DNA of 64,000 nt from positions 124,001-188,000 of the IMG/VR virus record IMGVR_UViG_3300034072_000758; one strand, given 5' to 3'. A program made the translations under genes and the position numbers. The notes under the pieces are model-generated. The model saw only the letters and a list, made by a program, of their open reading frames with translations. It was not told the origin of the DNA and searched no databases. Of the stretch, positions 27,362 through 44,308 are shown in pieces. Positions within the stretch are counted from its first letter, which is position 1. Every line of letters starts with the position of its first letter.

Positions 27362-27916
27362 ATGGAATTTCTTTATAGACCCGAATTTTGGCTGGTGACC
27401 TTGCTATTAGTTTTAGCAGTCATCACGCTATCTAATCTATGGTCCGATTTCGCATTTATGTATTATACCCGCAAAGGCCGCTATCGCAGCAAATACTATG
27501 AATTTCCCAATGTGTTCAAATACATATTCTTTAAGAAGAAATTCAATCCAAAAGTTTACAACCTACCAAGAAAGCTTGAGGAAACATTCTCACCTCTCGC
27601 GGCTTATCACGGTCGGTTCAGGAGTCTGGAAATTATTGGTGGAGTTCATATCGAACTATCCGGCGTCGGTGAGTACCATCCAAACATTCTAACGGTTGAA
27701 GGTGACCGATGGATTTTATCTAATGATCCAAACGTGATGATGCCGATTCCGTTTTTTGATCGCTGGCGCGCGATCTACGGGAAATATCAATATATTTACG
27801 TAGGCAATAGCTTTTTCTTCAAGGGTGATGTAAAGTGTTTCGAAGAGGATTTGACCATTATCCTCATGTGTATTGATGACCACATAAAAGAAAAATTTAG
27901 GCCCATTTCATTATGA
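27362..27916 (+). CDS. Membrane-anchored C-terminal-motif protein (G-N/D-xxx-FExD subfamily)
   Basis: N-terminal TM; FFKGDVKCFEEDLTIILMC. Confidence 0.7.
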   Translation: MEFLYRPEFWLVTLLLVLAVITLSNLWSDFAFMYYTRKGRYRSKYYEFPNVFKYIFFKKKFNPKVYNLPRKLEETFSPLAAYHGRFRSLEIIGGVHIELSGVGEYHPNILTVEGDRWILSNDPNVMMPIPFFDRWRAIYGKYQYIYVGNSFFFKGDVKCFEEDLTIILMCIDDHIKEKFRPISL

Positions 27917-28668
27917 TACTCGGAAGCCGCGCCCGCACTGATGAATTTTTCAAAACCTCTGGGATTAAAGCCCATGAGTTGCTGACACGCATGGCTGATC
28001 GGAGAGACGGTCTTGAAGCCGAAACGCTTGAGCACAATCGATACGGAACAGTCCGGGTAATCAATCTGGATGGCGTCTATATCCTGATTGAACTTGGTAA
28101 CGATAAGTCTTTGGCGCGGGGTAGAAACAAGCATGAGGTAGAAGTCCTACCCCTGATCATTCACGATTATGGTCCAGACAAAAATACCCTCAAGCGCCAT
28201 GTTCAACCAGAATTAGTCTATGAGCCTATTCGCTCGAAGGGCTATCGAGCCAACGTATATGGTTCTTACACTGTTGCGACCAATCGCTTATTCTATTTCA
28301 GAGGGCAATACGAAAATGATCATGACGGTTATCGTTTGGTAGAGTTTCACAAACCCCCGATTCTACATTACAAAAATGATGATGTCATGGATGCCATACA
28401 ACGCATCGCCATCCATCTAAGGTATGAGGATAGAGGGAACGTTCGGCAGACAAGGTATCAACACGAGCGTTGGAATTTTGCTATGAATTTTGGCGCACGA
28501 TACGTATTTACCGAATACGACAATATGCCATTATATAATGCGCTGACATTCAAACAACCGGATTACGAAATCATCTTTGACAATGATTTTAATCAATTCT
28601 CGGCATTCTTGTGGGGAAATAAAGAGGATTTCGATGAAACCCTCACGCTGTCGATCCTCACCAACTGA
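27913..28668 (+). CDS. C-terminal-motif protein (G-N/D-xxx-FExD subfamily)
   Basis: Ends LWGNKEDFDETLTLSILTN*. Confidence 0.7.
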   Translation: MILGSRARTDEFFKTSGIKAHELLTRMADRRDGLEAETLEHNRYGTVRVINLDGVYILIELGNDKSLARGRNKHEVEVLPLIIHDYGPDKNTLKRHVQPELVYEPIRSKGYRANVYGSYTVATNRLFYFRGQYENDHDGYRLVEFHKPPILHYKNDDVMDAIQRIAIHLRYEDRGNVRQTRYQHERWNFAMNFGARYVFTEYDNMPLYNALTFKQPDYEIIFDNDFNQFSAFLWGNKEDFDETLTLSILTN

Positions 28669-28915
28669 GGTGAATGTCACACGTTAGGACATAATCAGGT
28701 TGCCAGCCGTCGATGGTGAAGCCGCGATCTTCCAGTATGGCGACCACTTCGCTCGCATTGTGTGGATCATCGATGTAGACCCTGACCCAGCCGGAAGAGA
28801 GGTCGAAACGTCGAGCGTTATGAGCCTCGGCTTCCAGCCGCTTGTCGAGATAGCTTTCGATTGACAAGGGTTCGTCGTCGCTGATGAAATCCCTCATGTT
28901 TTGAGCGGTGATCAT
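28658..28915 (-). CDS. Hypothetical protein
   Basis: 85 aa, ATGA-coupled. Confidence 0.6.
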   Translation of the reverse strand: MITAQNMRDFISDDEPLSIESYLDKRLEAEAHNARRFDLSSGWVRVYIDDPHNASEVVAILEDRGFTIDGWQPDYVLTCDIHLSW

Positions 28916-29244
28916 TTAGGAGCCTTATGTTTGAGGATTACATCGTCGCTGACCTTGTAAGCCAGCACGGCGAGTTGATCGTAGTAATCCAGCGTCATGT
29001 CAACGATCTTGTCGATTTGAGCGCGGGTACATACGATCCTAACCGGGATCATGCGTTCCTCGAACAGTTCACCTTCCCTCGAAATCCACTGGCCTTTGGC
29101 CGGGGATAGGATCGTGAGACCACCACTTACGGCCCGAACCTTCTTGTCCCAGACTTTGTGGAAGCGAGTGCGAATCGGCTTACCGTCCAACCGGCGAATG
29201 GTCGGAACGAGAATTTCCCACATATACAATTTCGGCTGGGTCAT
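28912..29244 (-). CDS. Conserved phage hypothetical protein
   Basis: AGGAG SD; TTGACA-N16-TACAAT promoter at 29273-29300. Confidence 0.7.
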   Translation of the reverse strand: MTQPKLYMWEILVPTIRRLDGKPIRTRFHKVWDKKVRAVSGGLTILSPAKGQWISREGELFEERMIPVRIVCTRAQIDKIVDMTLDYYDQLAVLAYKVSDDVILKHKAPK

Positions 29245-29296
29245 AAGAGGCTCCTATATTTTATACAGGAGTATTGTATCATACGTTGAGTATATG

Positions 29297-29650
29297 TCAA
29301 GATAAGCTTAGAGCTATTCTCATCAGTATCTCATCTACTTCATTTCGAGAGAATTTGGGATTGAAGAAATATTTCTCGCGCTTACTACCAGTCATGATGT
29401 TTAATAAATTCTCTCTGGTATCGTGCCACATTATTTGTTGTAGCGCATATTGATTATCTGTATTCAACATACCTATGATAAAAAATTCACCAACATTGGT
29501 TCGAACAACGGTTTCTCGACCCAGACTAATACGCTTACTATAACGTTCACGAGCCTCGTTCGCCAGAAGCTCAATTAAGCCGTCTATGTCTTTACGATTA
29601 ATATATCTGGACATGAAAGAATTGATGTTGGTTACAGTGATATATTTCAC
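29297..29650 (-). CDS. C-terminal-motif protein
   Basis: Ends RNEVDEILMRIALSLS*. Confidence 0.7.
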   Translation of the reverse strand: MKYITVTNINSFMSRYINRKDIDGLIELLANEARERYSKRISLGRETVVRTNVGEFFIIGMLNTDNQYALQQIMWHDTRENLLNIMTGSKREKYFFNPKFSRNEVDEILMRIALSLS

Positions 29651-29901
29651 GATAAAACCAACATAGCTTTCATAAGCACTTCATCCAGACGCTCCGACGA
29701 AGCGTTCGACATATATTTCACATTTTTGTCGCAACCGAATGGCTCAATAATAACTTCCTCATAACGAAGACGATGAAGAACAGCCGAAAAAGAGTCCCAA
29801 GTAAAATCCCCAGCTTCAAAAGTTGGCCAACGTTTCCTAGTCAATTTATCTAATTGTTCCCAGACCTCGCGCGGCACTTCGCTGTGATAGGTTGGTCTCA
29901 T
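29647..29901 (-). CDS. C-terminal-motif protein
   Basis: Ends ERLDEVLMKAMLVLS*. Confidence 0.7.
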   Translation of the reverse strand: MRPTYHSEVPREVWEQLDKLTRKRWPTFEAGDFTWDSFSAVLHRLRYEEVIIEPFGCDKNVKYMSNASSERLDEVLMKAMLVLS

Positions 29902-30218
29902 GACATCGCCAATTTCAAAGTTATCAAAACATCATCGAAATGCTTTGGACGACAGTTGATGTAATAGAATGACCGAAGCTGGATTTTAATATCGCCATAG
30001 TCCAAACTGGACAGGACCGGAACGTAATCCATCTTTGGAAACCTTTCCCTATTGAGCCAAGTGCCAGTCAGCAACGCTTTACCAACAGGTAAAGGGTTCA
30101 GACGACTACCCACATCATTTGTCAGAATGCTTTGACGCTCGTACAATGGCTGTATGACTGGTAAGAAGCGTTCGCTCCATACGCGGTTCGGAATTTTGTA
30201 AAACCCCTCGCCGCGCAT
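29898..30218 (-). CDS. C-terminal-motif protein
   Basis: Ends KHFDDVLITLKLAMS*; start uncertain (30218 or 30251). Confidence 0.6.
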   Translation of the reverse strand: MRGEGFYKIPNRVWSERFLPVIQPLYERQSILTNDVGSRLNPLPVGKALLTGTWLNRERFPKMDYVPVLSSLDYGDIKIQLRSFYYINCRPKHFDDVLITLKLAMS

Positions 30219-30231
30219 AAGCTGGTCAATG

Positions 30232-31791
30232 CTAATTGAGATCGTCCCCATCGGGCCAAGTATCCGTGATCAATGGTGTGTCGGAATAAGCCATCCGAAT
30301 ACGCTCAGTAATGAACGGAATAAACGGATGACTCATACGAAGTGTCTGGTCCAAAGCCCACATCAAAGTGTTAATAGCTTCGGGATCACCATTGTAAAGT
30401 CTTTGCTTGGATATTTCAAGATAGAACCCGCAAAGATCATCGAACAAAAACTTTCTGAAACACATAGCCGCATCACTATAACGCAGATTAGCCAAATGCT
30501 CAGAAATCTCATTAGAAGCCCGTAGAGCCGTTTTATAGATCATCCGGTCACACTCTTGGGCCAAGGTCAACTTACCCGTCTCTGGCCTTCCTGCGCGGTC
30601 CCACTGACCCAATGTGAACTTAGATGCGTTCCACAACTTCGTACACAAAGATTTGGCCCCTTTGAACTTCTCGTCCCACAGCTTCATATCCATCGCTGGG
30701 GTTGTGTTCTCGGCCAACGCAAATCGCATCGTGTCGCAACCATACGTCTCGATAAGTTCAAGCGGATCGATACCATTACCCTCGCTCTTGGACATCTTCT
30801 TTCCATCTTTGTCGAGGATCAATCCGTGAAGGTAGATCGTCTTGAACGGAAGCTGATCGGTCAGGAACAAGCCCATCATCAGCATACGAGCACACCAGAA
30901 GAAGAGAATGTCCGAAGCCGTCTCGATCATATTGGCTGGATAGAACTTCTTATAGTCCTCGGTCTGTTCCGGCCACCCCAAGGTTGCGAATGGCCATAAA
31001 GCTGAACTGAACCACGTATCCAGACAGCCCTCAGCTTGGGTCCAGCCGCCATCAAGAAATTCCAGATACTTCCATTTTTCGGAAGTATCGAGAATTTTTA
31101 TCTCACCGTTTTTGGTGAAGATCGGAAGACGATGGCCCCACTTGATCTGGCGAGAAATACACCAAGGCTCAATACGATACAGGAAATCACGGATCGTGCC
31201 TTCCTGCCCTTTTGGATGAATATTGATGTTGCCTTGATCAAGCTCACCTAGCAATCGGTTGGCCAACAACGTCATGTCGAGATACCATTGACCCTCGGCC
31301 TCGTAAAGCATTCCCTGTTCGTGGCAACGTTTTAGGGCTTCGGTAGTAGCCTTGGAGTAACGGTCGTCCAGAGTAAACGTTTCCCGGCTCCAATCAGCCG
31401 AAGCACCGCAACGGCGTAATTGTCCGGTGATGGTAGATTTGAGGTTCTGTTTATAGTTCTGGGAATATGGGTAGAACTGTGTGTCGTCGGTCGGGTCAAG
31501 CCCTTCGGCGAGCATGGCTTCTTCAAGCTTACGCTGCGTGGCAAGGCCAGCATGATCCGTACCGGGAAGCCAAAGAGTATCGAACCCTTTCATCCGGTGG
31601 TAGCGTGTAGAAATGTCTTGAAGGGTGGCGAACATCGCATGGCCCATATGAAGGATGCCGGTGATGTTCGGGGGAGGCATTGGGATGAAATATGGAGTCC
31701 CGGTGCCAGATGGTTTGAAGTGGTTATTTTGTTCCCAACGGGAATAGATCAAAGCTTCGTCATTCGCATGATCGAAAAACTTTGATGTCAG
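30232..31791 (-). CDS. valS: Valyl-tRNA synthetase, minimal (no CP1 editing domain, no C-terminal coiled coil)
   Basis: PPPNITGILHMGHA, PGTDHAGLATQ, WCISRQIKWGH, LDTWFSSALWPF, KMSKS. Homology extends upstream of the track start (LTSKFFDHANDEALIYSRWE); start codon uncertain (CTG 31791 or TTG 31752). Confidence 0.92.
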   Translation of the reverse strand: MTSKFFDHANDEALIYSRWEQNNHFKPSGTGTPYFIPMPPPNITGILHMGHAMFATLQDISTRYHRMKGFDTLWLPGTDHAGLATQRKLEEAMLAEGLDPTDDTQFYPYSQNYKQNLKSTITGQLRRCGASADWSRETFTLDDRYSKATTEALKRCHEQGMLYEAEGQWYLDMTLLANRLLGELDQGNINIHPKGQEGTIRDFLYRIEPWCISRQIKWGHRLPIFTKNGEIKILDTSEKWKYLEFLDGGWTQAEGCLDTWFSSALWPFATLGWPEQTEDYKKFYPANMIETASDILFFWCARMLMMGLFLTDQLPFKTIYLHGLILDKDGKKMSKSEGNGIDPLELIETYGCDTMRFALAENTTPAMDMKLWDEKFKGAKSLCTKLWNASKFTLGQWDRAGRPETGKLTLAQECDRMIYKTALRASNEISEHLANLRYSDAAMCFRKFLFDDLCGFYLEISKQRLYNGDPEAINTLMWALDQTLRMSHPFIPFITERIRMAYSDTPLITDTWPDGDDLN

Positions 31792-31811: not shown

Positions 31812-31893
31812 TTGATTATCCTCCAAAGGATTAAGGGTTGAAATATTTTAATACATTATTTAGAATGCTAAGGTCAAGCCAAATGGTATTTTC

Positions 31894-32256
31894 GTGCTCC
31901 CATTTAACTCTTTCGTCACAATACTAAAAACCGCTCCATACAAAGAGTATGTCAAGGGTGGCGCGGGTTACGACATGGTTAATGGTAACTTTACTGTAGA
32001 ATTGCGAACTTACGATTATAGAAATAATCAATTCCTACAGTCGTACAAGATGAGTATTTACTGGAAAGGGCTGGAAATATATCAAGGCATATTGACGCTG
32101 GACACTGGTAATATTAGAATCGATGGTGATACTGTTGTCGGAGGAAGATTTCTCCACATAGGACCAAGTGGTTATGATATTAAACCCCACCGCATAGGGT
32201 TCTTGGGCGAAGACTCGCACGAAGAAATGATGATCGAAATTTTGAGGATGATGTGA
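31894..32256 (+). CDS. C-terminal-motif protein
   Basis: Ends DSHEEMMIEILRMM*. Confidence 0.6.
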   Translation: MLPFNSFVTILKTAPYKEYVKGGAGYDMVNGNFTVELRTYDYRNNQFLQSYKMSIYWKGLEIYQGILTLDTGNIRIDGDTVVGGRFLHIGPSGYDIKPHRIGFLGEDSHEEMMIEILRMM

Positions 32257-32897
32257 TGGGTGATGATCATATTGACGCAAGAAACAGCGTATGGTGGGCT
32301 TGGATCATGGTGTTGGTCGGAATTGTCGGATTAGCTGGTATCGGTTTTCGGGTATATAAAATAATTACCGGGATAGCTCCACTCAAATCATTTTGGTATG
32401 AGTTTTGGACCGTAACACCAATGCTTATTAGTACAATGCTTGGTTTATTTTTTGCTGTATTGCTCTATCATTATTATACCTATTACCAATACGAATTGCC
32501 ATATTCGGATAAGTATCCTCGCAATATATATCCATTTCCAAAAAGGAACGAGTTTAAGAAACTTATCCTGCGCAAAAACGATACGTTGGATGTTCAGTGG
32601 TTCTTGAAGAAAGCCATTGACGCCGCCCCATATTTCCACACACCGGACCCACGCCTTCCCCACAGGCTTTTTCACGATGTCGGAAAAATTGGATCAATTG
32701 ATCTCGATTTTTATGGAAGCATTCTGTACACAAAATATGTCCAAGGTAACGGCTGGCAGATCGTCTTTTGTAATGATCCCGAAATACAAGATTTTTTCAA
32801 AGGACAAGGTTATTATTTTGTCAATTCAAAGATGATAGTGTATGGTGATCTCGAACAGTTAGAGAACGACCTTATTACTATGAGGTTGTCTATGTAA
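32256..32897 (+). CDS. Membrane-anchored C-terminal-motif protein (G-N/D subfamily)
   Basis: Two N-terminal TMs; ends VYGDLEQLENDLITMRLSM*. Confidence 0.72.
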   Translation: MGDDHIDARNSVWWAWIMVLVGIVGLAGIGFRVYKIITGIAPLKSFWYEFWTVTPMLISTMLGLFFAVLLYHYYTYYQYELPYSDKYPRNIYPFPKRNEFKKLILRKNDTLDVQWFLKKAIDAAPYFHTPDPRLPHRLFHDVGKIGSIDLDFYGSILYTKYVQGNGWQIVFCNDPEIQDFFKGQGYYFVNSKMIVYGDLEQLENDLITMRLSM

Positions 32898-32913: not shown

Positions 32914-33210
32914 GTGGACGTATCTTTTCTTGTAAATCATTTTATAGAACTCACTCCATTTCGGGATGACGAGAACTATATTTCAACTACCCTGATCGGC
33001 AACACACCATGCGCCTATTATCGGTCTTTTACTAACACCAGTACCTTAGTCACAGTCTTCACACAGGACTGGATTATTGCGCCAGCACCCATAGAAGATA
33101 CACTTGATGATTCTACAAAATGGGTGTATCTTGGTGGGGAATATTATTTTAAGGGAAACGCGGAACAGTTTGAAAACGACATGATTGTCTTTAGGCTGGT
33201 GTTACAATAA
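32914..33210 (+). CDS. C-terminal-motif protein (G-N/D subfamily)
   Basis: Ends YYFKGNAEQFENDMIVFRLVLQ*. Confidence 0.72.
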   Translation: MDVSFLVNHFIELTPFRDDENYISTTLIGNTPCAYYRSFTNTSTLVTVFTQDWIIAPAPIEDTLDDSTKWVYLGGEYYFKGNAEQFENDMIVFRLVLQ

Positions 33211-33722
33211 TGGCTACAGGTCTCCAACTCGTATTGTTAATCCTCTTTTCGTCCCTCGCAATATTCGTCTTAAAGACGTTGACGAAGGGTAAGCTGTTGT
33301 TCGCCTCAAAGGATCGCCAGAAAGCTTACGCCGAATATATGATCCATAAGGGTTATATTTACAGTAAATATCAGGACCAGCGCCAGCTTCCATCCTTCAA
33401 CGTCTGGGAAAAGATGTCAAAGAAGTATATGGATTTGGAATTTATTGACGATTATTTTTCGGGCAATAGGCGCGGTGCTGATTGGTATGACGCCAACACT
33501 TTTCATTATACCTTCCCCGAATACGGTATGTTGGCCGTGGCCACGCGCGATGATGACCGAATGCTGCTGTTTTTTTCCGGTTCGGATTGGCGATTGGTTT
33601 ATCGTCTCAAGTTTGTGAACAACCTCAGCCGTGCCATATATCTCGGCGAAGGGCTGTACTTCGAGGGTAACCCGGAACAGTTCGAAAACACAATGTCGAT
33701 CATCAAGCTGAAAGCGTCATGA
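33210..33722 (+). CDS. Membrane-anchored C-terminal-motif protein (G-N/D subfamily)
   Basis: N-terminal TM; ends LYFEGNPEQFENTMSIIKLKAS*. Confidence 0.72.
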   Translation: MATGLQLVLLILFSSLAIFVLKTLTKGKLLFASKDRQKAYAEYMIHKGYIYSKYQDQRQLPSFNVWEKMSKKYMDLEFIDDYFSGNRRGADWYDANTFHYTFPEYGMLAVATRDDDRMLLFFSGSDWRLVYRLKFVNNLSRAIYLGEGLYFEGNPEQFENTMSIIKLKAS

Positions 33723-34120
33723 ACGTAAGAGACGATATTGCGTTCTGGGCTAAAATCTTAAACGCTTCTGATGTTGATCGAGTAGTCAAACTCAATGGCT
33801 ATCAGTTTAAAGCTAAGTATAACGCCAATGGTTTAGTTCAAAGTTTTGTTTCGAGATCACATAACGAGTGGCGTAGCAGTCTTATGTTGATTTTTGAAAA
33901 CAGCTTATTTCGTTTTACCGTAAACGCTGTAATCAATATTGTGGATTCAAATCGTCCGCCCTCTGATTTTCATGAACTTCCAATGTTACATACCAAACCG
34001 TTCAATCCAATAGTATTTCGGATAGAACAATATGGTTCACATAAACTCGAATTATTCGACTGGACAGAAGACGAGTTCGATAGTATGGTTATGTCTCTTT
34101 ATTTGAAGTTGAAAGACTGA
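33719..34120 (+). CDS. C-terminal-motif protein (DxxFW subfamily)
   Basis: Starts MNVRDDIAFW; ends TEDEFDSMVMSLYLKLKD*. Confidence 0.72.
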   Translation: MNVRDDIAFWAKILNASDVDRVVKLNGYQFKAKYNANGLVQSFVSRSHNEWRSSLMLIFENSLFRFTVNAVINIVDSNRPPSDFHELPMLHTKPFNPIVFRIEQYGSHKLELFDWTEDEFDSMVMSLYLKLKD

Positions 34121-34638
34121 TGTATATCACAATCATCGCCGTTTTCATGACTGTGTTGTCTTTGGTACGAATGTATCAGGAGATCATAGCTTATTGCACC
34201 ACTCGGATCATATCGCTTGTTGATGTTGAAAACCGCAACTTCGGTATTTTTAACATCAACATTATTCGGAATAGCTGGGTGCGCAAGATTGCGAAGCCGC
34301 GCAATTTTGATGAACGCCTTATCGACATTCTGATCAACAAGTTCCCCGAAAAGCTGGACAAGAACGGCTCGGCCAAGATGTCGAAGAATGGGACCATTCT
34401 CGAACTCCAAGGTTCGTTCAACGATGACCATTATCATTTCCGACGCCTCGGCGGTCGAAAGCCTTGGGTCGAAGTGAAAACCGCCAAGTGGGTTCTGACC
34501 AAGGCTCCCTTTATTCATCCCACACTTAACCCAACACCCAAAGGTAATTGGGTGAAGATTGGCGACAATTATTTCGTCGGTGGCGACATCGCGCGGTTTG
34601 AAGACGATGTTGCGATTATCGCTCTCACACACAATTAA
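34120..34638 (+). CDS. Membrane-anchored C-terminal-motif protein (G-N/D subfamily)
   Basis: Ends YFVGGDIARFEDDVAIIALTHN*. Confidence 0.72.
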   Translation: MYITIIAVFMTVLSLVRMYQEIIAYCTTRIISLVDVENRNFGIFNINIIRNSWVRKIAKPRNFDERLIDILINKFPEKLDKNGSAKMSKNGTILELQGSFNDDHYHFRRLGGRKPWVEVKTAKWVLTKAPFIHPTLNPTPKGNWVKIGDNYFVGGDIARFEDDVAIIALTHN

Positions 34639-34645
34639 GCGGCAA

Positions 34646-36210: not shown

Positions 36211-36239
36211 TTGACGAGTTGATTTGTTTCAATTATACT
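36211..36239 (+). promoter_or_regulatory. Sigma70-like (early) promoter
   Basis: TTGACG-N17-TATACT. Confidence 0.6.
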
Positions 36240-36850: not shown

Positions 36851-37248
36851 CTAACATCGATCTCTTCTTCATGATCTGCACCCTCATAAACAAGTATGAG
36901 GATAAGCTTACCCTAACGGAAGCTGGTAGTGGAGACTTTAGCTTTAGACAACTCAAAGGAAGAGTTTTGATAGGTGGGGTTTACACCAATCTTGAATATT
37001 CTGCGCCTAACCCAATATACGTCTCGTTGAAGACGACGAACATCCACATTTATTGTGGAATGACGACCGTTAGTATGTTGAGTAATATCTCCCTAGAAGA
37101 TTACTTGAGAGCACCACTCAATATTTTAGAATCTTATTATTTTATAAACGCATATTTACACAACCCAGAGAAAAATGTTACAGTCAGTTACAAGAGCAAA
37201 GATCGCGCAGAAGATCATCTTATGATTCTCAGGCTGGCAGCATCATGA
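36847..37248 (+). CDS. C-terminal-motif protein
   Basis: Ends KDRAEDHLMILRLAAS*. Confidence 0.7.
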   Translation: MTNIDLFFMICTLINKYEDKLTLTEAGSGDFSFRQLKGRVLIGGVYTNLEYSAPNPIYVSLKTTNIHIYCGMTTVSMLSNISLEDYLRAPLNILESYYFINAYLHNPEKNVTVSYKSKDRAEDHLMILRLAAS

Positions 37249-37652
37249 CCGACATAACAGAAGACATTGAGTGGTGGGGAACTTTGTTTTCCGACATCGC
37301 GGCTCGATATAAAGTCGAAGAGACCTCTGATAAAATGCTGCTGTCGATTCCACTATCGAACCACAGTGTTGTGGAATGCTCGGCCTATCAACGCAAGAAC
37401 CCACCTATCGGTATGGAGTTCGTGGACATGAAATTCTCGTCCAGAAACTTCACCTTTTCATTCAATCTGTCTCGTCCCTATAAGGATAACGGGATGACTA
37501 TCGACCGACTGCGTTCAGGAGGCTTCGGCGAAGGGGTGATCATGTTCGATGATAACCAATTCCTGTACTATGACGTGAAGATGTTCGAGCACGGCACCAC
37601 CGCCGAAATCGATGAAGACCTCATGTTGCTGCGGCTGGCGTTCGCTTCCTGA
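37245..37652 (+). CDS. C-terminal-motif protein (DxxFW subfamily)
   Basis: Starts MTDITEDIEWW; ends TAEIDEDLMLLRLAFAS*. Confidence 0.72.
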   Translation: MTDITEDIEWWGTLFSDIAARYKVEETSDKMLLSIPLSNHSVVECSAYQRKNPPIGMEFVDMKFSSRNFTFSFNLSRPYKDNGMTIDRLRSGGFGEGVIMFDDNQFLYYDVKMFEHGTTAEIDEDLMLLRLAFAS

Positions 37653-38071
37653 TGCTTAGTATAACGGATCATATTTTCCAAGATTTTAAGTTCTGGGACT
37701 CTATCGTAGACCGGGGAGACGAATTAATTTCATGGGGCGTTCATGTTGAAGAGTTGGACAATACCAACAAATATCAATTCTATAGTAACACACATAAGGT
37801 TAGACTAACGAGTACAGATTATAATTGCTTCTCGTATAGTATAGAAGCTTCTTGTTTCGTCTTCCAATATGAGATCATTGGGTCTATGTTGTCTTTGAGT
37901 GAAGAGAAACAATTCTGGACGCGATATTACTCTGAATTTCCATACTCCCCAAAAAACATCATCGAACTTTACCCCGGCGTATATTATGATTGCCACGCAT
38001 ATCATCTTGAAGTAAAATCCGAACCAGACGCAATTGACCTAATCACTCGCCTGAGATTGACCTATGTATGA
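37652..38071 (+). CDS. C-terminal-motif protein (DxxFW subfamily)
   Basis: QDFKFW near the start; ends EPDAIDLITRLRLTYV*. Confidence 0.7.
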   Translation: MLSITDHIFQDFKFWDSIVDRGDELISWGVHVEELDNTNKYQFYSNTHKVRLTSTDYNCFSYSIEASCFVFQYEIIGSMLSLSEEKQFWTRYYSEFPYSPKNIIELYPGVYYDCHAYHLEVKSEPDAIDLITRLRLTYV

Positions 38072-38843
38072 CGATACCACCGACAAATTCTGGAAGCTGT
38101 ACGGCGATGATCTATGCGAGCAATTGAGTGAACAATCCTGCGATCCAGACAATAAGATGTATGACCATATCGGGGTCATCAATTATGATCGCATCAACAT
38201 GCTCAATATCCGAATGTTTGTTGAAGTGACCTTGGAAGGTCAGGAGCCGTTTTGCGTGGAATACGAAAGCGGTAACAACAACGGCTTCGCCATCCATAAA
38301 TTTGGCCCAAATATCCAGTTCGAAGAATACGAACCAGATGTTCGTTACTTCGCGCCGACGCATATTGACACCTATGTTCGAAATCTAACGTATATCCGCG
38401 AGCAAGAGCGGAAGATGAACTACGATTTTCACTTCGACCCCTCATCGAGGATTTTTAAATATTATAATGATTGGGCCAGCAACAATGCTTGCGCCATATC
38501 AACACGCGAACCCTATAAGATTCTGAAATACGAACATGCTCAAAAAATGGTCCTGACCGTCATGGATCATAAAGACGATGGTGTGAAACTATCCAAGTTT
38601 ACTCAAGCCTACAGATTGTTTCACCAAATCGCCGAAGCGGCTACTTGGACTTTGTATTGGCAACACTGTCCTACCGAAATCGAACGCTATGACGAATATA
38701 TTCCCTCGGCGGGGCATCTATCGCCACCACGCTATCGTATCGAGTACCGATTTGGCGATAACAAAGGGACGGCTGTGTATCTTCGCGGAAACGTGGCTGA
38801 CTTTGAAGACTATGCGATGCGGGCTATACTAATGTCAAAATAA
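38064..38843 (+). CDS. C-terminal-motif protein (G-N/D subfamily), two-domain
   Basis: Ends YLRGNVADFEDYAMRAILMSK*. Confidence 0.7.
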   Translation: MYDDTTDKFWKLYGDDLCEQLSEQSCDPDNKMYDHIGVINYDRINMLNIRMFVEVTLEGQEPFCVEYESGNNNGFAIHKFGPNIQFEEYEPDVRYFAPTHIDTYVRNLTYIREQERKMNYDFHFDPSSRIFKYYNDWASNNACAISTREPYKILKYEHAQKMVLTVMDHKDDGVKLSKFTQAYRLFHQIAEAATWTLYWQHCPTEIERYDEYIPSAGHLSPPRYRIEYRFGDNKGTAVYLRGNVADFEDYAMRAILMSK

Positions 38844-39210
38844 GGGTGGATAGATCGCATTCCATTTGTTCGCGGTCACCCTTGTATCTGCGTGTGCCCC
38901 AATCCAATTCCCAACCGAGGCCCTTCATAGCCAGAACAAAAATCTGACTAGCTGTCCCGTTGAAGAAACAGACGTTGAGTGTGATGCTCATGGTTATACC
39001 ACTGATTTCAAATGGTATAAAAATCTTGCGGCGGGACGACCCCATCTTAAGCCCGGTATCTCTTGACATCCGAGCGAAATTCACATGCTCCTGATCAGCA
39101 AGTCCACGCACCGAAGTTTCTATGCTTTTGATCTTTACCAGATTATCCCATTCTAACGCTTTGGTCAGTGTCTTAGGATCATTCGGATAGGGTTTGCTGA
39201 ACCACATCAT
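38824..39210 (-). CDS. C-terminal-motif protein (G-N/D subfamily)
   Basis: Ends RYKGDREQMECDLSTLILTLV*. Confidence 0.7.
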   Translation of the reverse strand: MMWFSKPYPNDPKTLTKALEWDNLVKIKSIETSVRGLADQEHVNFARMSRDTGLKMGSSRRKIFIPFEISGITMSITLNVCFFNGTASQIFVLAMKGLGWELDWGTRRYKGDREQMECDLSTLILTLV

Positions 39211-39641
39211 ACTGTCACTTCCGATAGCAGCAAGACAATCGTTGTGACATCTTCTTCAAAACGAGCCGCGTTACCTTTGAACTGGTACTTGCTTCGTTTT
39301 CCGATATTCACCCCGGCGGTATTGTGCTTCAATATCCATTCGGGAGAAATAACAGAGTCGATTACAAAATCACGACGCAAATCACCGCCAAAAAAAGTGT
39401 GTAGCGCTTCCACCGCGATCTTCACAGAACTAAACTCAAGCTGATGCTTGTGAAGAAGGGTGAATTTATTTTGTGCGAACTCAGGCACGTGACCCAAATA
39501 CTGAATCTCGATTACTTCCTTCATTTTGCGTATACTATCCTGCATTTGTGCGGATTCACGCAAAAGCCTCAGCGCCTTTTCGACAACCGTAGCATCATGA
39601 ACCGTCTTGAAAGGAAGAAGGGGTAAGAATAGGGTTTTCAT
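39207..39641 (-). CDS. C-terminal-motif protein (G-N/D subfamily)
   Basis: Ends QFKGNAARFEEDVTTIVLLLSEVTV*. Confidence 0.7.
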   Translation of the reverse strand: MKTLFLPLLPFKTVHDATVVEKALRLLRESAQMQDSIRKMKEVIEIQYLGHVPEFAQNKFTLLHKHQLEFSSVKIAVEALHTFFGGDLRRDFVIDSVISPEWILKHNTAGVNIGKRSKYQFKGNAARFEEDVTTIVLLLSEVTV

Positions 39642-39738
39642 TTGACTATAATACGCAATGAAAATAAATTACGCAATATATCTTTACATTTTACGATTTG
39701 ATGATATGGTGTAAACATATCAACATCGGGAGACAAAT

Positions 39739-39987
39739 ATGTACACTCTCGCGCAATTAGCTCTCTTTGATCGCTGTCTGTTTCCAGATGACTTTTACAA
39801 CGCTTTGCTTAAGCATGGTTGCCAACCCACCCTTGCTATGTTCATTCGTTCGTGGTTGATCGAAGGAAAAGGGAAGCGTGGTATCGTGTCTGTATATCAA
39901 GAGTGGGTAGAAACATCCTCTGATGGGCGTCCTCTCGCAGCTACTATAGACGCCATCCTACAAGAATTTTTCGAGGGGAAAAACTGA
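39739..39987 (+). CDS. Hypothetical protein
   Basis: GGAG SD; 82 aa. Confidence 0.6.
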   Translation: MYTLAQLALFDRCLFPDDFYNALLKHGCQPTLAMFIRSWLIEGKGKRGIVSVYQEWVETSSDGRPLAATIDAILQEFFEGKN

Positions 39988-40181
39988 TGCTCGATCTCAT
40001 TATTCACGAATGGCGGTTGTTCGTCACTTGTGCGGTTCAGGCCAGCGCAGTTTACATCGTCATTCGCATCAATCTTCCAGCAAGTGATGGTGAGCGTTTC
40101 CCCGGTGGGCGTAGGGCCATGCTGTCGGCGTTCATTCTGTTTCTAGTCTTCTTCTTGTGCGGAGTATCCCATGTTGCCTGA
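39987..40181 (+). CDS. Small membrane protein
   Basis: Two TM segments; coupled. Confidence 0.6.
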   Translation: MLDLIIHEWRLFVTCAVQASAVYIVIRINLPASDGERFPGGRRAMLSAFILFLVFFLCGVSHVA

Positions 40182-40488
40182 TTACGCTACAATCGGTCCT
40201 TGGGCGATGGTGTCCTCCATATCACTTCTGGTCTATTTCTCAGTCGTCACGTTCATGATGATCTTCAACATGGTGCGGCGCGAGAAGGCATCCGTTCTGG
40301 TGGCAATCTTCCTGTCTACCGGTGCTGCTATCGGCATCTTCGCTTTCGTTCATATCGTTTTTATGATCGTTCACTTTGGTAAGCTTACCCCTATTTTCAC
40401 GGCGGCTGTCTGGATTTGCCAAATCGTCGTGTTGACAAAATATCGCTCGGCGTTCTTCGCCATATTCGGAAAGGATGTACACCAATGA
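40171..40488 (+). CDS. Small membrane protein
   Basis: Three TM segments. Confidence 0.65.
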   Translation: MLPDYATIGPWAMVSSISLLVYFSVVTFMMIFNMVRREKASVLVAIFLSTGAAIGIFAFVHIVFMIVHFGKLTPIFTAAVWICQIVVLTKYRSAFFAIFGKDVHQ

Positions 40489-40775
40489 TCGACATTACTC
40501 CCTTGGAAACCTACATTTTCGGTATGGTGGGTTTCGCTTCGTTCGTCATCGCCTTCGCGTCATCACTGATCATGTTTAAAAATCATGTCCCCGATTTCCC
40601 GTTCATGCTGTCGGGGCTGATTTCGATGGTACTTGCTACGCTTACCCTCATTTTCGTTATGTTTGTCGTGGGTGCGCTATTCATCACCGGTCTTTCCAAA
40701 CTGGCCTTCATCGGGTTCGTGGTATCCCTCGCGGTCGGTGCGGGTATCTGGTGGAATATGAAGGTATCCCAATGA
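40485..40775 (+). CDS. Small membrane protein
   Basis: Three TM segments; ATGA-coupled. Confidence 0.65.
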   Translation: MIDITPLETYIFGMVGFASFVIAFASSLIMFKNHVPDFPFMLSGLISMVLATLTLIFVMFVVGALFITGLSKLAFIGFVVSLAVGAGIWWNMKVSQ

Positions 40776-41077
40776 TCGAATCCATCCTCAACGGCCTTCT
40801 GTGGTACTATGCTGCGCTGTCGGCTCTGGCCACCCCGATCCTGCTGTCGATCATCGCCGGGGCGAACTACGCCGTATCGCTGAACCATCTGTTCACACAC
40901 GCCAAACCACCGATGGCAGATCGTAACCTCAACGAATGGCCGCTGGTCGCCGGTCAAGCGTTTTTGGCAATGATCATCCTGACCATCGTTATCATCGCGT
41001 GTGCGGTCCTCCTACCCTTCATCGCTGTCGCATACGCTATGTATTTCCCGTTTTCTCTCGTTTTTAAGAAGACGTAA
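40772..41077 (+). CDS. Small membrane protein
   Basis: Hydrophobic; ATGA-coupled. Confidence 0.65.
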   Translation: MIESILNGLLWYYAALSALATPILLSIIAGANYAVSLNHLFTHAKPPMADRNLNEWPLVAGQAFLAMIILTIVIIACAVLLPFIAVAYAMYFPFSLVFKKT

Positions 41078-41361
41078 TGTTCGAATTATTCGAAAAATAT
41101 GTCGAGTGGGCTAGGTCTTTCGAGGTAGTAAAACCCGCAAGTTTAGTCGTCTTGGTGATCACGGGGTTCCTTATCGTCCCCATGCGTAATTTACTCATTA
41201 ATGAAATGAGTGATATGGTCATCATGAGTTGGATACTGGCTTTCCTTATTGGTATAGCAGCATTCCTTACTGGAATGCTGATCTTCTTGTTCCTTCCCTT
41301 CGCAATGGTAATCATGGTGGGTATTTCTATCTTTTATGCGGTGTGGCGATGGAAACCATGA
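41077..41361 (+). CDS. Small membrane protein
   Basis: Three TM segments; resembles 41358-41672. Confidence 0.65.
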   Translation: MFELFEKYVEWARSFEVVKPASLVVLVITGFLIVPMRNLLINEMSDMVIMSWILAFLIGIAAFLTGMLIFLFLPFAMVIMVGISIFYAVWRWKP

Positions 41362-41672
41362 ATATTTTTATTGCGTGGGATAAAATATACAACAGCATCC
41401 CGATAGAATATGTTATCGCCCCTTCTGTTTTGATTGCTGCGATAACAGCCCCCATCGTGTTTCTTCGGGTAAAAGAAGAAAATGATGATTTTTCTATGAT
41501 CATGGTGTCATGTTTAATGACTGCGGCGAGCGCGTTCTGCACTGTTGTGGTTTTGGCTGGCGTTGTTAAATTCTTGCCATATACCATTTGTGTAATCGTG
41601 GGTCTTTCCATTTTCGCAGTGTTCTGGCGAGCTTATGGAAAGAAGTTCCTAGCTTTTTTCGGCATTAACTGA
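41358..41672 (+). CDS. Small membrane protein
   Basis: Three TM segments; ATGA-coupled. Confidence 0.65.
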   Translation: MNIFIAWDKIYNSIPIEYVIAPSVLIAAITAPIVFLRVKEENDDFSMIMVSCLMTAASAFCTVVVLAGVVKFLPYTICVIVGLSIFAVFWRAYGKKFLAFFGIN

Positions 41673-41719: not shown

Positions 41720-42754
41720 ATGCGTATGAATGACCTGATCTTCTGTAATGATGGCGTACTGAGAGTACGATACAACGATGAACTCCCGTTGGTCGATCTC
41801 AAGTCTTTTCAAGACCTCAGTGGCGATGATGACCTGAACTTCATCACCGGCTGGTGGGAAGAAAATGTCGTCTTCGAAGAAGGTCTGACCATCGCCAAGT
41901 TTCTCATGTGCCTTGAGCCTTGGGCGAAGCTGTGGTCAATCATAACCAAGAAAGACATTGCTGCTTATATCAAAGAAAGCCGCAAGCCCACCATCGTCAA
42001 AGAGACTGATAAAAAATGGTACGCGGTGATCGGCTACTTCACTGATGTCGAGCCAGAGCTTCAACACAGCACCTCAGCGTCGGACTTCACTTCGTTTGAA
42101 GATTTCTTGAATAATCGTACCCCACCGACACTCAAGCCAAAATGGAATTTCCACGGCCACTATAAACTAAATGGCCATGTTCAGGGTGAGGTTGAACACT
42201 ATTCCTTGGACTATTCGCCTATGAACGAAATGGCGAACTATCCATTGTATCTTTCGCCAAATCATATGGTCAACGTCTCCAAGTTCTACGTCGAAAAGTA
42301 CGGCGATGCTGAGACGGTCGATCTGTTCAATTATGATGGGTTGGGTATGCGTTCGGTAACACATGAGGACCGCACACACCACTACATCATTGGCGATAAG
42401 AGCCACAATCTGCGTGATGTGGTTGAAGCCTTCTTTTGGTGGCTCCCACACAGCCCAACCAGCCGTGATGCGTTCAACGCCAAGCTCAAGGAAGATTTGG
42501 ATCGTCTGGACATCGACGTGTCTAAAGTGGTTGAGAAAACGGTTGATGACGAGACCGAAATCAAGATTGTTGTGGCCGATGGTGCCTTTGATGGTCTCAC
42601 GTCGCAATGGGAGGCTGAGAAGAAGTATTTCTTAGACGGTCTGGAACAAGCTAAGAAAGCCAAGATTTGTAAGCTTCGGGTGGGCGGTGCGAAAGAAGGT
42701 AAGGTGCCAGAAAAGCGCGTCTCCTTGTGGCTCGTAGATGACGAGGACTTGTAA
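41720..42754 (+). CDS. Hypothetical protein (acidic, 344 aa)
   Basis: Long ORF with no recognised motif. Confidence 0.75.
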   Translation: MRMNDLIFCNDGVLRVRYNDELPLVDLKSFQDLSGDDDLNFITGWWEENVVFEEGLTIAKFLMCLEPWAKLWSIITKKDIAAYIKESRKPTIVKETDKKWYAVIGYFTDVEPELQHSTSASDFTSFEDFLNNRTPPTLKPKWNFHGHYKLNGHVQGEVEHYSLDYSPMNEMANYPLYLSPNHMVNVSKFYVEKYGDAETVDLFNYDGLGMRSVTHEDRTHHYIIGDKSHNLRDVVEAFFWWLPHSPTSRDAFNAKLKEDLDRLDIDVSKVVEKTVDDETEIKIVVADGAFDGLTSQWEAEKKYFLDGLEQAKKAKICKLRVGGAKEGKVPEKRVSLWLVDDEDL

Positions 42755-43113
42755 TGTTGGATGTTGTTAGCTTCTATCTGACCCTCTATATTGGCGCGGC
42801 TTTAACTGGCTGGCTGTTTTGGATTTGGGTCGTCGTTACGGCAATTGGTCTGTATGTCGCATTTGTCAACGAAAACCTCTATGAGTTCAGACAAGCGTGT
42901 TCAATTGGTTGGTGGAGCCTCGTTGCTATACTAGCAGTGCCGATTGTCGTGCCACTCGTCATCATCGTTGGTCTAGGCTACAGTCTGTTGGCTTATATAG
43001 ATCATGTTTATGTTCGCAAGACCACCACCCACAAAAAGATCGGTGAAACGATAAAGGCATACTTTGCTCAGATCGATGCCGAAGTCGAACAGAATAATAA
43101 GAATAAAAAATGA
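42754..43113 (+). CDS. Membrane protein
   Basis: Two TM segments; coupled. Confidence 0.65.
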   Translation: MLDVVSFYLTLYIGAALTGWLFWIWVVVTAIGLYVAFVNENLYEFRQACSIGWWSLVAILAVPIVVPLVIIVGLGYSLLAYIDHVYVRKTTTHKKIGETIKAYFAQIDAEVEQNNKNKK

Positions 43114-43397
43114 TTTTTGACAAAACTCTTGTATATACGTTGTATATGCGCGCTACCGTTGAAGTCGAAGGCCCTCCCGAAATAAAAGTTTTGAATGTGA
43201 ATGATACACTTGTTCGGTTCGAAACTTGGGGCAAGCATGATTGGCATCGAACAATGTCTATCTATACCGATGACTTTAAGATAGACTACGACTTCCAAAG
43301 TATTAACAACTGGAATATGCTGAGACAATTTCCACCCAAGGTCTATAATCAGGAACAAGCTGAAACGACATGGATGTTGATGAAAATACTCGCCTAG
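43110..43397 (+). CDS. C-terminal-motif protein
   Basis: Ends QEQAETTWMLMKILA*. Confidence 0.65.
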   Translation: MIFDKTLVYTLYMRATVEVEGPPEIKVLNVNDTLVRFETWGKHDWHRTMSIYTDDFKIDYDFQSINNWNMLRQFPPKVYNQEQAETTWMLMKILA

Positions 43398-43753
43398 ACT
43401 TCGTTCGTCTTTACAACAAATGTAAAGATAAAAAGAGTCGTACCACGATGGCGGTAGGTGATCATATTCTGCGCTTTCATGTTGTCGGCCAAGAAAATGC
43501 CACGGTCGTAAAGTTTCGAGTCAGCGTTTCAAAATTATTCTCTTATGAGTTCCGCGCTCAACTTACCTGTATGGTGAAGAACGAGCAATCTCTTAAGGGA
43601 ACGCCTTTCATTAAGCTCTATTACTATAGTGGTTACTTTCATTACCGCGTAATGCATTCTGTGCTATCGAGCACTTTTACATCATCAAAGTCTTTCGTAA
43701 AAGATGATCTTGAATCCATTATCGCTATGGCCAAAATTCAGCATATGTGCTAA
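43370..43753 (+). CDS. C-terminal-motif protein
   Basis: Ends KDDLESIIAMAKIQHMC*. Confidence 0.6.
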   Translation: MDVDENTRLDFVRLYNKCKDKKSRTTMAVGDHILRFHVVGQENATVVKFRVSVSKLFSYEFRAQLTCMVKNEQSLKGTPFIKLYYYSGYFHYRVMHSVLSSTFTSSKSFVKDDLESIIAMAKIQHMC

Positions 43754-43762
43754 CGATTGATT

Positions 43763-44308
43763 ATGGAATTTTTGACTTCGCCCTTGTTTACTATGTTAGT
43801 GACCTGCGGGTTCATCTTTCTCGTGGTATTCGGCTCACAGTTGAAACAAATTCTGCGGGATTATCATCCCCGGTATAAAGACTATCTTTTTGACCGGGCC
43901 AAGCATATGAAAGCCACCACAAAACCCGCTCAGTATCCTTTGCCGGGGGTGTATCCTCTTGCTGCGGTCCCACTTGAACTAAGTATCACGTATCCATCGT
44001 TCAGTAAATGGCTACGCATGGAGCATATCAGCGAGCCAATGAACCTCGATTTTACTAATACTATCGGCGGTCAAGTGGATGCGGACTATGTGTTTACTTA
44101 CTACTTCAACAAGTCGAACATAATAGTCATGTACCGTGACCTAGAGCGTTATCTACAGTTCAAGACCGAAAAGTGGAATTGCAATCTCAGCTATATGCTC
44201 ATTGAGAAGCCAAGCAAGAAGACTTACCTGATCGATGGAAAATATTTCGTTCAAGGCGATCTGGCTCAATTCGAAGAAGATATGATGTCTCTAAGGTTAT
44301 TGAACTGA
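43763..44308 (+). CDS. Membrane-anchored C-terminal-motif protein (G-N/D subfamily)
   Basis: N-terminal TM; ends YFVQGDLAQFEEDMMSLRLLN*. Confidence 0.72.
   Translation: MEFLTSPLFTMLVTCGFIFLVVFGSQLKQILRDYHPRYKDYLFDRAKHMKATTKPAQYPLPGVYPLAAVPLELSITYPSFSKWLRMEHISEPMNLDFTNTIGGQVDADYVFTYYFNKSNIIVMYRDLERYLQFKTEKWNCNLSYMLIEKPSKKTYLIDGKYFVQGDLAQFEEDMMSLRLLN

What the first reader, a model, noticed from the sequence alone, without database searches (positions are those of the whole stretch)
27362..44308. Subfamily with an extended C-terminal domain W...(Y/F)-x-G-(N/D)-xxx-FE-x-D, half of them membrane-anchored
Seen: ten members (27362, 27913, 32256, 32914, 33210, 34120, 38064, 38824, 39207, 43763) share a longer signature. 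A conserved Trp strand (EGDRWILS, GNGWQIVF, TQDWIIA, GSDWRLVY, TAKWVLT, SPEWILK, GLGWELD, TEKWNCN) is followed by F/Y-K/E/Q-G-N/D-xxx-FE-x-D and the terminal helix. Five (27362, 32256, 33210, 34120, 43763) have N-terminal TM segments. 32914 is nearly the bare domain, and 27913 and 38064 carry large unrelated N-terminal parts. Inference: a shuffled module that brings the common partner to the inner membrane or to different targets.
Basis: partly seen in the sequence, partly recalled or inferred. Interest (0 to 1): 0.6.

Follow-up and report, generated by a model that had tools for sequence, protein, structure and literature searches.

The report
Membrane-tethered orphan protein family, huge phage
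A 517-kb phage from subsurface and soil metagenomes carries about a dozen diverged copies of a small protein domain with no relatives outside its own lineage, over half tethered to the cell membrane facing the cytoplasm; the family is real and new, but its function is unknown.

Summary
All ten ORFs exist, and all carry G-[DN]-xxx-[FLM]-[ED]-x-[DTY] followed by the terminal helix. Shuffles give 1.5.

A profile recovers a core of 11 (seven in the window) in leave-one-out tests, E 6e-15 to 3e-3. ORF 38824 is marginal. ORFs 38064 and 27913 share only the last ~25 residues.

Seven of 12 members have an N-terminal membrane segment, against 2 of 71 other terminal-helix genes (p = 6e-6). Charge distribution favours N-out/C-in.

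AlphaFold models (pLDDT 70-75) show a six-stranded antiparallel meander closed by the C-terminal helix. Longer members add two short helices and a membrane stalk.

Pfam, PHROGs, NCBIfam, PDB, fold libraries and an exhaustive search of 1.84 billion proteins found nothing outside this phage, apart from one 4.3-kb contig of a related phage and one weak hit in a more distant one.

Strain differences in gene 32253 are all synonymous.

Function is inferred only: early, cytoplasmic-face host-interaction proteins that arose by tandem duplication.

The parts
27362..27916 (+). Core member, 184 aa. One N-terminal membrane segment (residues 9-27), a basic and aromatic linker, the conserved domain, and a 13-residue tail after the helix.
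   Evidence: ORF. Profile E 4e-17, leave-one-out E 1e-7. Membrane segment with 4 K/R in the C-flank.
32253..32897 (+). Core member, 214 aa (ATG at 32256). Two membrane segments (16-34 and 53-71), then the domain.
   Evidence: leave-one-out E 2e-5. The six differences from a second strain are all synonymous third positions.
32914..33210 (+). Core member, 98 aa. This is the bare domain: a six-stranded meander plus the C-terminal helix (residues 83-97).
   Evidence: leave-one-out E 1e-13. AlphaFold model with pLDDT 69.8, pTM 0.60.
33210..33722 (+). Core member, 170 aa. Membrane segment 3-21 continuing as a helical stalk to residue 54, two short helices (63-72, 77-85), six strands (97-153), and the terminal helix (155-169).
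   Evidence: AlphaFold model with pLDDT 75, pTM 0.52. Five K/R residues follow the membrane segment.
34120..34638 (+). Core member, 172 aa, with a weaker N-terminal hydrophobic segment (1-19). Its closest paralogue is L001, outside the window.
   Evidence: phmmer E 4.5e-10 to genome 231766-232275. Leave-one-out E 5e-10. Membrane score 1.83.
39207..39641 (-). Core member, 144 aa, with no membrane segment.
   Evidence: Profile E 1e-16, leave-one-out E 3e-6.
43757..44308 (+). Core member, 183 aa (ATG at 43763). It has an N-terminal membrane segment and the mid motif YPSFSKW.
   Evidence: Profile E 3.5e-25, leave-one-out E 6e-15..
38824..39210 (-). Probable diverged member, 128 aa. The Trp strand is followed almost directly by the Y-K-G-D turn and the helix.
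   Evidence: Profile E 0.03-0.12, aligning as two collinear fragments. Matches the motif regex.
38064..38843 (+). 259 aa. Shares only the last ~25 residues (strand, G-N turn, F-E-D, helix). The N-terminal 140 residues resemble Caulobacter phage CcrBL9 gp336.
   Evidence: Profile E 0.4-7. Regex match. BLASTP E 2e-10 to gp336, whose C-terminus lacks the motif.
27913..28668 (+). 251 aa. Shares only the last ~25 residues. The N-terminal part has no relatives.
   Evidence: Profile E 3-14. Regex match. No tblastn hit in phages.

Best explanation
This is a real protein family specific to one phage lineage. The phage has a complete 516,805-bp genome and a contractile tail.

Size and placement (shown): there are 12 members supported by profile or motif, 15 by motif alone. 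They are the best-conserved branch of a much larger set of about 70-90 small genes in the same genome. The larger set shares only an acidic-capped, amphipathic C-terminal helix.

Fold (predicted at moderate confidence): the shared unit is a small alpha/beta domain.
- A six-stranded antiparallel meander, whose fourth strand carries the invariant Trp.
- A tight Gly-Asp/Asn turn.
- The terminal helix, which begins F-E-x-D and lies on the sheet.
- Longer members add two short helices before the sheet.

Membrane anchoring (shown for the segments, inferred for the topology): seven of 12 members have an uncleaved N-terminal anchor. Its charge pattern puts the domain on the cytoplasmic face of the host membrane.

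Origin (inferred): the family grew by tandem duplication and fast divergence, with anchors gained or lost.

Function (inferred, not shown): these are early or middle, non-structural host-interaction proteins, for example in takeover, counter-defence or exclusion. On this reading the membrane-tethered branch acts at the inner face of the membrane. The variable sheet and loops would give target specificity, and the strand-turn-helix end is mainly the folding core.
For: The family is real:
- The motif occurs in exactly 15 of 2651 ORFs, against 1.5 in shuffles.
- Leave-one-out recovery of all 11 core members is at E 6e-15 to 3e-3.
- Conservation is at the protein level only. Third codon positions carry about 0-0.3 bits, apart from one Leu/Met position where the codons mostly end in G.
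- Six of six strain differences in gene 32253 are synonymous.

The family is lineage-specific:
- Nothing in Pfam, PHROGs or NCBIfam.
- A word search of 5.8 billion proteins and an exhaustive hmmsearch of 1.84 billion representatives returned the genome's own members plus P0015.
- P0015 lies on contig L007 with two further family genes. Its baseplate hub is 61% identical to the window's hub.
- There are no matches in Atu_ph07, Phosso or LR756504.
- There is one weak hit in about 250 kb of flanks from 24 more distant relatives.

Fold: two models agree on the meander plus terminal helix.

Membrane branch: 7 of 12 members against 2 of 71 other terminal-helix genes, Fisher p = 6e-6. K/R residues cluster after the anchor and none precede it.

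Timing:
- The T4-type late motif TATAAATA marks structural genes, for example at 27316 on the minus strand.
- It precedes no terminal-helix gene.
- Sigma-70-like hexamers lie in the divergent gaps that head the gene arrays.
Against: - No experiment or homologue bears on function.
- Promoter evidence is consensus matching only: 53 sites against 43 expected across the region.
- Identical contigs in one metatranscriptome do not prove transcription.
- Topology rests on a hydropathy scan and the positive-inside rule, not on a trained predictor. The two-segment member 32253 is ambiguous.
- The models have pLDDT 70-75 and come from shallow alignments of 14-15 sequences that overlap each other.
- The conserved hydrophobic positions of the helix span roughly 200 degrees on a helical wheel (my calculation from the table). 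This is wider than packing on one sheet needs, so the helix may also contact something else.
- The host is unknown.
Confidence: 0.45

Rival explanations
1. The terminal helix, shared by about 80 otherwise unalignable proteins, is an exposed docking element for one common phage or host partner. The anchored subfamily brings that partner to the membrane.
For: - The helix is the only element shared across the large set. Single-seed iterative searches do not join the general members, and helix-HMM hits are 46-73 against 0 in controls.
- Its conserved hydrophobic arc is wide and its acidic cap is nearly invariant.
- 38064 and 27913 carry the end piece on unrelated N-terminal parts.
Against: - In both models the helix is an integral part of the fold and has the highest confidence. 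This alone could explain its conservation.
- No partner has been identified.
- The complex prediction gave no verdict.
Confidence: 0.2
2. The C-terminal helix is a sorting or turnover signal, for packaging into the capsid, export, or timed proteolysis. The family is then defined by a shared fate rather than a shared activity.
For: - It lies at the extreme C-terminus of about 10% of the genes.
- The last residues are small or hydrophobic.
- In the related contig the family genes lie next to the baseplate hub gene, and in the window they lie next to structural genes.
Against: - Membrane-anchored members could not be packaged into a capsid.
- Degrons and secretion signals are usually unstructured, whereas this one is predicted to be a packed helix.
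- No late promoter motif precedes any family gene.
Confidence: 0.1
3. The domain is a miniature helix-grip (START/SRPBCC-like) module that binds a hydrophobic ligand. The anchored members would handle a lipid or lipid-linked compound at the membrane.
For: - The predicted order alpha-alpha-beta6-alpha resembles, from my knowledge, the helix-grip order beta-alpha-alpha-beta6-alpha.
- SRPBCC, CoxG, START, cyclase and Aha1 chains recur among the weak structural matches at Z 3.3-4.3. An SRPBCC cluster in the Atlas has TM 0.48.
Against: - All scores are below the level the tool's own notes call meaningful (Z under 8).
- The domain has about 100 residues, against roughly 140-150 for that fold (my knowledge).
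- No sequence signal was found.
- The best domain match is a protein of unknown function, VC0508, at Z 5.9.
Confidence: 0.08
4. The N-terminal hydrophobic segments are cleaved signal peptides, and the domain works outside the cytoplasm.
For: The hydrophobic segments lie at the very N-terminus.
Against: - There is no positive n-region before the hydrophobic core, and there is a K/R cluster after it.
- The 33210 model continues the segment as one helix to residue 54.
- Five of 12 members have no such segment at all.
Confidence: 0.05

Closest known systems
Lineage-specific expansions of small proteins in jumbo phages, for example the ~35-copy zinc-ribbon expansion of Bacillus phage G (PMC7824862)
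   Same: Many diverged paralogues of a small domain within one very large phage genome. They are arranged largely in tandem arrays, lie outside the structural modules, and have no assigned function.
   Different: The domain here has no recognisable relation to any described fold or family. It is defined by a C-terminal strand-turn-helix signature, and one branch of it is specifically membrane-anchored.
START/SRPBCC (helix-grip) domains
   Same: An antiparallel sheet closed by a long C-terminal helix, with two short helices before the sheet in the longer members.
   Different: Structural scores are weak (Z 3.3-4.3, TM below 0.5). The domain is about a third smaller, has no sequence similarity to them, and no pocket was shown.
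VC0508 of the Vibrio cholerae VSP-II island (PDB 2w56)
   Same: The best structural match to the soluble part of 33210: Z 5.9, rmsd 4.0 A over 80 residues.
   Different: The score is below the level that indicates homology. VC0508 itself has no known function, and sequence identity is 6%.
Double-wing domains (T4 MotA C-terminal domain, E. coli YdcD, PDB 1kaf and 8wj5)
   Same: A small sheet-plus-helix arrangement found in phage proteins. YdcD scores Z 4.0 over 75 residues, and MotA appears among the non-significant Foldseek rows.
   Different: The scores are not significant. There is no evidence of DNA binding, and the membrane tethering argues against a role as a transcription factor.
Small N-terminally anchored early proteins of T-even phages, such as Imm, Sp and rI (from my own knowledge)
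   Same: Short phage proteins anchored in the host membrane by a single N-terminal segment and encoded among non-essential genes.
   Different: No sequence or fold relation was tested or found. Several of those proteins face the periplasm, whereas this domain is predicted to be cytoplasmic.

Membership tests
Any curated protein family (Pfam-A, PHROGs v4, NCBIfam) | A profile match at or near the curated threshold | tested here: not met
   No hit better than E 0.01, and none near a cut-off, for the ten proteins or the 15 rows of A3.
This phage's terminal-helix gene set (defined here) | An acidic pair followed by h-x-x-h-x-[LM]-x-h within the last ~15 residues | tested here: met
   All 15 motif-bearing ORFs end this way. 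The set has 46 members at E<0.01 and 73 at E<0.1, with 0 in reversed or internal controls.
The G-[DN]-xxx-F-E subfamily (the finding) | A strand, then G-[DN]-xxx-[FLM]-[EQD]-x-[DTYE], directly before the helix | tested here: met
The G-[DN]-xxx-F-E subfamily (the finding) | Profile-detectable similarity over the last ~60 residues, including the Trp strand | tested here: inconclusive
   Met for seven of the ten plus four or five genes elsewhere. Marginal for 38824. Not met for 38064 and 27913. The Trp region is not significant on its own, although the Trp is present in 11 of 12 members.
START/SRPBCC helix-grip superfamily | A significant structural match over the whole domain to a solved member | tested here: not met
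   Best Z 4.3 (2ns9, 81 residues) and Atlas TM 0.48. Foldseek found nothing at E<=0.001.
START/SRPBCC helix-grip superfamily | A hydrophobic ligand cavity between the sheet and the C-terminal helix | not testable with these tools
Sec-type cleaved signal peptide proteins | A positively charged n-region before the hydrophobic core, and a cleavage site after it | tested here: not met
   There are 0-1 K/R residues before the hydrophobic segment and 2-5 in most members (1 in 34120) in the 15 residues after it. No trained predictor was available.

The most novel reading that the evidence does not exclude
The terminal helix is an address label read by a single phage- or host-encoded receptor, making it a phage-specific protein-sorting or recruitment code carried by about 10% of the genes. 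The anchored G-[DN]-F-E subfamily would then be the membrane-resident arm of that system, assembling a phage-built platform on the cytoplasmic face of the host membrane.
Probability: 0.12. Interest if true: 0.8.

Novelty: new variant of a known kind. Interest (0 to 1): 0.4.

Why it matters
Huge phages devote much of their coding capacity to small genes of unknown function, and this family gives one block of them a defined shape. It supplies a testable domain, a clear membrane-tethered branch, a bare-domain member (32914, 98 aa) suited to structure determination, and a signature that picks out all copies. If the shared C-terminal helix proved to be a recognition element, it would point to a single hub through which the phage organises dozens of its proteins. 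If it is only a folding core, the family is still a clean example of rapid paralogue diversification in a virus, but of specialist interest only.

Tried and rejected
Searches for relatives that found nothing:
- Megablast and tblastn of the region and of member 34120 against 50,697 phage records.
- A pattern scan of IMG/VR with the family alignment: 53 pattern matches, none confirmed.
- An IMG/VR scan with the 782-aa virion protein.
- A search with the alignment of Atu_ph07, Phosso and LR756504. There was no positive control inside that call, but the same profile does find the genome's own members in other searches.
- Relatives cannot be drawn for a virus record.

Spurious hits: three long repeat proteins in the exhaustive search (P0006, P0013, P0014) are repeat-driven artefacts.

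Structure and feature searches:
- Fold searches in PDB (Foldseek), BFVD and the ESM Atlas gave nothing significant.
- VIA-align found no match above Z 4.3 for the domain model.
- The full-length model was dominated by coiled-coil matches to its stalk helix.
- The language-model atlas search had low recognition and pointed to unrelated beta-rich peptidases.

Complex prediction: 33210 (residues 56-170) with 32914 gave no verdict, which is neither support nor evidence against binding.

Explanations considered and rejected:
- A DNA-level origin of the C-terminal conservation, such as a repeat, promoter or recombination site. Rejected because third codon positions carry almost no information.
- A Shine-Dalgarno origin. 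Rejected because the acidic pair lies 30-36 nt from the stop codon.

Not established:
- Leave-one-out support for the mid motif is collectively suggestive but individually weak.
- Profile-profile comparison of the subfamily with the general helix set gave only P 0.0015, mostly from the helix itself.

Full report
**Setting**

The window is bases 124,001-188,000 of a single 516,805-bp contig. The contig is held as a complete virus record with direct terminal repeats.

It is a tailed phage with a contractile-tail baseplate. PHROGs recognises a baseplate hub/tail lysozyme and several virion proteins just upstream of the finding. Its most similar cultured relatives are distant: Agrobacterium phage Atu_ph07, Sinorhizobium phage Phosso and the PA5oct group, at about 24-28% identity in a virion protein.

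The same DNA is present in subsurface and soil metagenomes, in two 2025 runs that look like one data set filed twice, and in small part in a wastewater metatranscriptome. The host is unknown.

**The observation**

All ten ORFs exist. Each ends with a hydrophobic strand, then G-[DN]-xxx-[FLM]-[ED]-x-[DTY], then the terminal helix.

- A regular expression for this motif, restricted to the last 36 residues, matches exactly 15 of the 2651 genome ORFs of at least 50 aa.
- Shuffled C-termini give 1.5 matches on average, and internal segments give 1.

So the signature is real and specific.

**How deep the similarity goes**

Pairwise similarity is weak, but several pairs are significant (32914 to 34120 at 1.8e-5; 34120 to L001 at 4.5e-10). 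Profile iteration over all genome ORFs converges on 11 proteins at E 1e-16 to 4e-25. The next hits appear at E of about 5e-3 (2e-4 with a shorter profile) or worse, and they share only the helix.

Leave-one-out tests:
- Every core member is recovered at E 6e-15 to 3e-3, ranking directly after the training sequences.
- Without the last 14 residues, 5 of 11 are still the first non-training hit.
- Without the last 24 residues, none is significant.

The conserved signal therefore lies mainly in the last strand, the Gly turn, the F-E-x-D cap and the helix.

The Trp strand is too short and too variably spaced for a profile. Yet Trp is invariant in the 14-row alignment that includes three genes of a related phage. 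A [polar]-W-x-[hydrophobic] pattern lies 21-38 residues before the Gly in 11 of 12 members, against a 10% background. That pattern was chosen post hoc.

- Seven are core members.
- 38824 is marginal (E 0.03-0.1), with the Trp and the turn aligned collinearly.
- 38064 and 27913 align only over the final ~25 residues.

My estimate is that about 0.6 terminal-helix genes would carry G-[DN] at that spot by chance. Three extras are therefore more than expected (Poisson P about 0.02), but each individual case is open.

**Real genes**

- Conservation is at the protein level. In the helix region, first and second codon positions carry up to 2 bits. Third positions carry about 0-0.3 bits, apart from one Leu/Met position whose codons mostly end in G.
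- A second strain, seen in runs X3/X4, differs from the window at six places in gene 32253. All six are synonymous third positions.
- A neighbouring family gene (36847) carries an in-frame 3-nt deletion in that strain.
- The longer antisense ORF 34099-34773 over gene 34120 is most likely spurious.

**Membrane anchors**

A hydropathy scan finds:
- One N-terminal segment in 27362, 33210, 34120 and 43757, and in L001 and L005 outside the window.
- Two segments in 32253.

Before the segment there are 0-1 basic residues. In the 15 residues after it there are 2-5 in most members and 1 in 34120. By the positive-inside rule (established knowledge) this gives N-out/C-in, so the conserved domain is cytoplasmic. 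For 32253 the count is ambiguous.

Anchoring is a property of this branch. Seven of 12 members are anchored, against 2 of 71 other terminal-helix genes (Fisher p = 6e-6). About 11% of all genes have such a segment.

**Structure**

ORF 32914, modelled with a 14-row alignment, gives pLDDT 69.8 and pTM 0.60. The model has a short N-terminal helix, a meander of antiparallel strands (21-28, 31-40, 43-50, 53-57 with the Trp, 71-74, 77-81), and a helix at 83-97. Confidence is highest over the last 30 residues.

Full-length 33210 gives pLDDT 75 and pTM 0.52:
- One long helix from residue 3 to 54 (anchor plus stalk).
- Two short helices at 63-72 and 77-85. These coincide with a weak second motif, [YL]-P-[SP]-F-x-x-W-x-K-x-x-K, seen in five to seven members.
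- Six strands, then the helix at 155-169.

The two models agree, but they rest on overlapping shallow alignments.

**Relatives and known folds**

Pfam, PHROGs, NCBIfam and PDB sequences give nothing.

The word-based search of 5.8 billion proteins returned only the genome's own proteins. Because the claim rests on absence of relatives, I then ran the exhaustive profile search of 1.84 billion representatives. It returned the 11 own members, three repeat-protein artefacts and one outside protein, P0015.

P0015 lies on a 4.3-kb metagenome contig (L007):
- The contig carries two more genes with the Trp strand and the turn-helix end.
- Its baseplate hub is 61% identical to the window's hub, so it is a fragment of a related phage.
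- There the family genes lie directly after the hub gene. This differs from the arrangement in the window, which suggests the arrays lie in variable regions.

Twenty-four more distant hub-bearing metagenome loci show no terminal-helix genes in their flanks. They contain one weak subfamily candidate, next to the hub of the closest of them (L011 12654-13079, E 0.04).

Fold searches found nothing significant:
- Foldseek against PDB and BFVD had no match at E<=0.001.
- The Atlas gave TM no higher than 0.48.
- VIA-align gave at best Z 4.3 for the domain, and Z 5.9 to the uncharacterised VC0508 for the longer model.
- Helix-grip (SRPBCC/START) proteins recur among the weak rows. The order alpha-alpha-beta6-alpha is reminiscent of that fold, but this is a lead and not a match.

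**The larger set**

In a greedy set of 787 genes, a terminal-helix pattern occurs in 59-95 genes, against 3-16 in shuffles. A helix profile finds 46 at E<0.01 and 73 at E<0.1, and none in reversed or internal controls. The hits are concentrated between genome positions 130 and 270 kb.

These proteins are otherwise unalignable. The subfamily is one of the few parts of the set that cluster by sequence. A profile-profile comparison of the two sets is weak (P 0.0015, 49 columns).

**Expression class (inference)**

TATAAATA, the T4-type late promoter consensus (established knowledge), occurs 34 times in the genome.
- 21 sites are intergenic, in a genome that is 93% coding.
- 19 sites lie within 40 nt of a start codon, including one before the virion gene that ends at 27310.
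- None precedes a terminal-helix gene.

Sigma-70-like hexamer pairs lie in the divergent gaps that head the arrays, at 31838-31866 and 39642-39715. The region as a whole is not significantly enriched for such pairs.

Four 151-nt contigs identical to the region occur in an RNA library, which does not prove transcription.

**Interpretation**

I take the finding to be a genuine, previously undescribed family. It is a small cytoplasmic alpha/beta domain, multiplied by tandem duplication, with one branch tethered to the inner face of the membrane. Most probably it belongs to the early or middle host-interaction gene class.

The N-terminal 140 residues of 38064 resemble CcrBL9 gp336, which ends differently.

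The 'common partner' idea is neither supported nor excluded. The one complex prediction gave no verdict.

- Read laying was given exactly 6,000 letters.
- No alternative genetic code was used.
- No step needed referral.

Noticed in passing
whole genome; in the window mainly 6124-63573 (for example 29297-30251 minus strand, 33719-37652 plus strand, 44308-50914 plus strand): About 70-90 small genes (roughly 10% of all genes) end in the same acidic-capped amphipathic helix, [DE][DE]-x-h-x-x-h-x-[LM]-x-h, but are otherwise unalignable. They are concentrated between genome positions 130 and 270 kb.
   Followed up: partly
window 27316-27323 (minus strand) and 33 other genome sites: TATAAATA occurs 34 times: 21 intergenic and 19 within 40 nt of a start codon. 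Eight sites lie exactly 5 nt before the start codon, which would leave almost no leader on late transcripts.
   Followed up: partly
window 30232-31752 (minus strand): A valyl-tRNA synthetase of only 506 aa matches full-length enzymes in two pieces. I believe cellular enzymes are nearly twice as long, so the editing insertion may be missing.
   Followed up: no
window 51361-52593 (plus strand): A threonyl-tRNA synthetase-like gene of 410 aa matches positions 242-613 of a 643-position profile. It is 56% identical to one in a 636-kb uncultured phage.
   Followed up: no
window 25146-26084 (minus strand): A 312-aa protein between the structural genes and the family array has a sub-threshold match to ART-PolyVal, the ADP-ribosyltransferase of polyvalent phage proteins (E 7e-5, 24 bits against a cut-off of 31).
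   Followed up: no
window 39987-41672 and 42754-43113 (plus strand): A run of six or seven small, very hydrophobic ORFs that look like polytopic membrane proteins. It coincides with the strongest AT skew in the window (-0.21) and lies just upstream of the anchored member 43757.
   Followed up: no
window 32228-32709 and 37132: A near-identical strain in two 2025 runs differs by six synonymous changes in gene 32253 and by an in-frame 3-nt deletion in gene 36847.
   Followed up: yes
L007 1-4307: This is a fragment of a related phage (hub 61% identical). It has three family genes directly after the hub gene, plus a small two-segment membrane ORF. A Cys-rich 243-aa ORF on the opposite strand looks to me like a homing-type endonuclease. 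The gene order differs from the window.
   Followed up: partly
window 34099-34773 (minus strand): A 224-aa ORF lies antisense to family gene 34120-34638. It is longer than the real gene and would mislead a length-based gene caller.
   Followed up: partly
window 44766-45347 (plus strand), 11205-12569 (minus strand), 8471-8545 (minus strand): An Ogg-HhH-like glycosylase at a sub-threshold score (24.2 against 27 bits), a radical-SAM protein, and a tRNA-Arg(TCT) gene.
   Followed up: no
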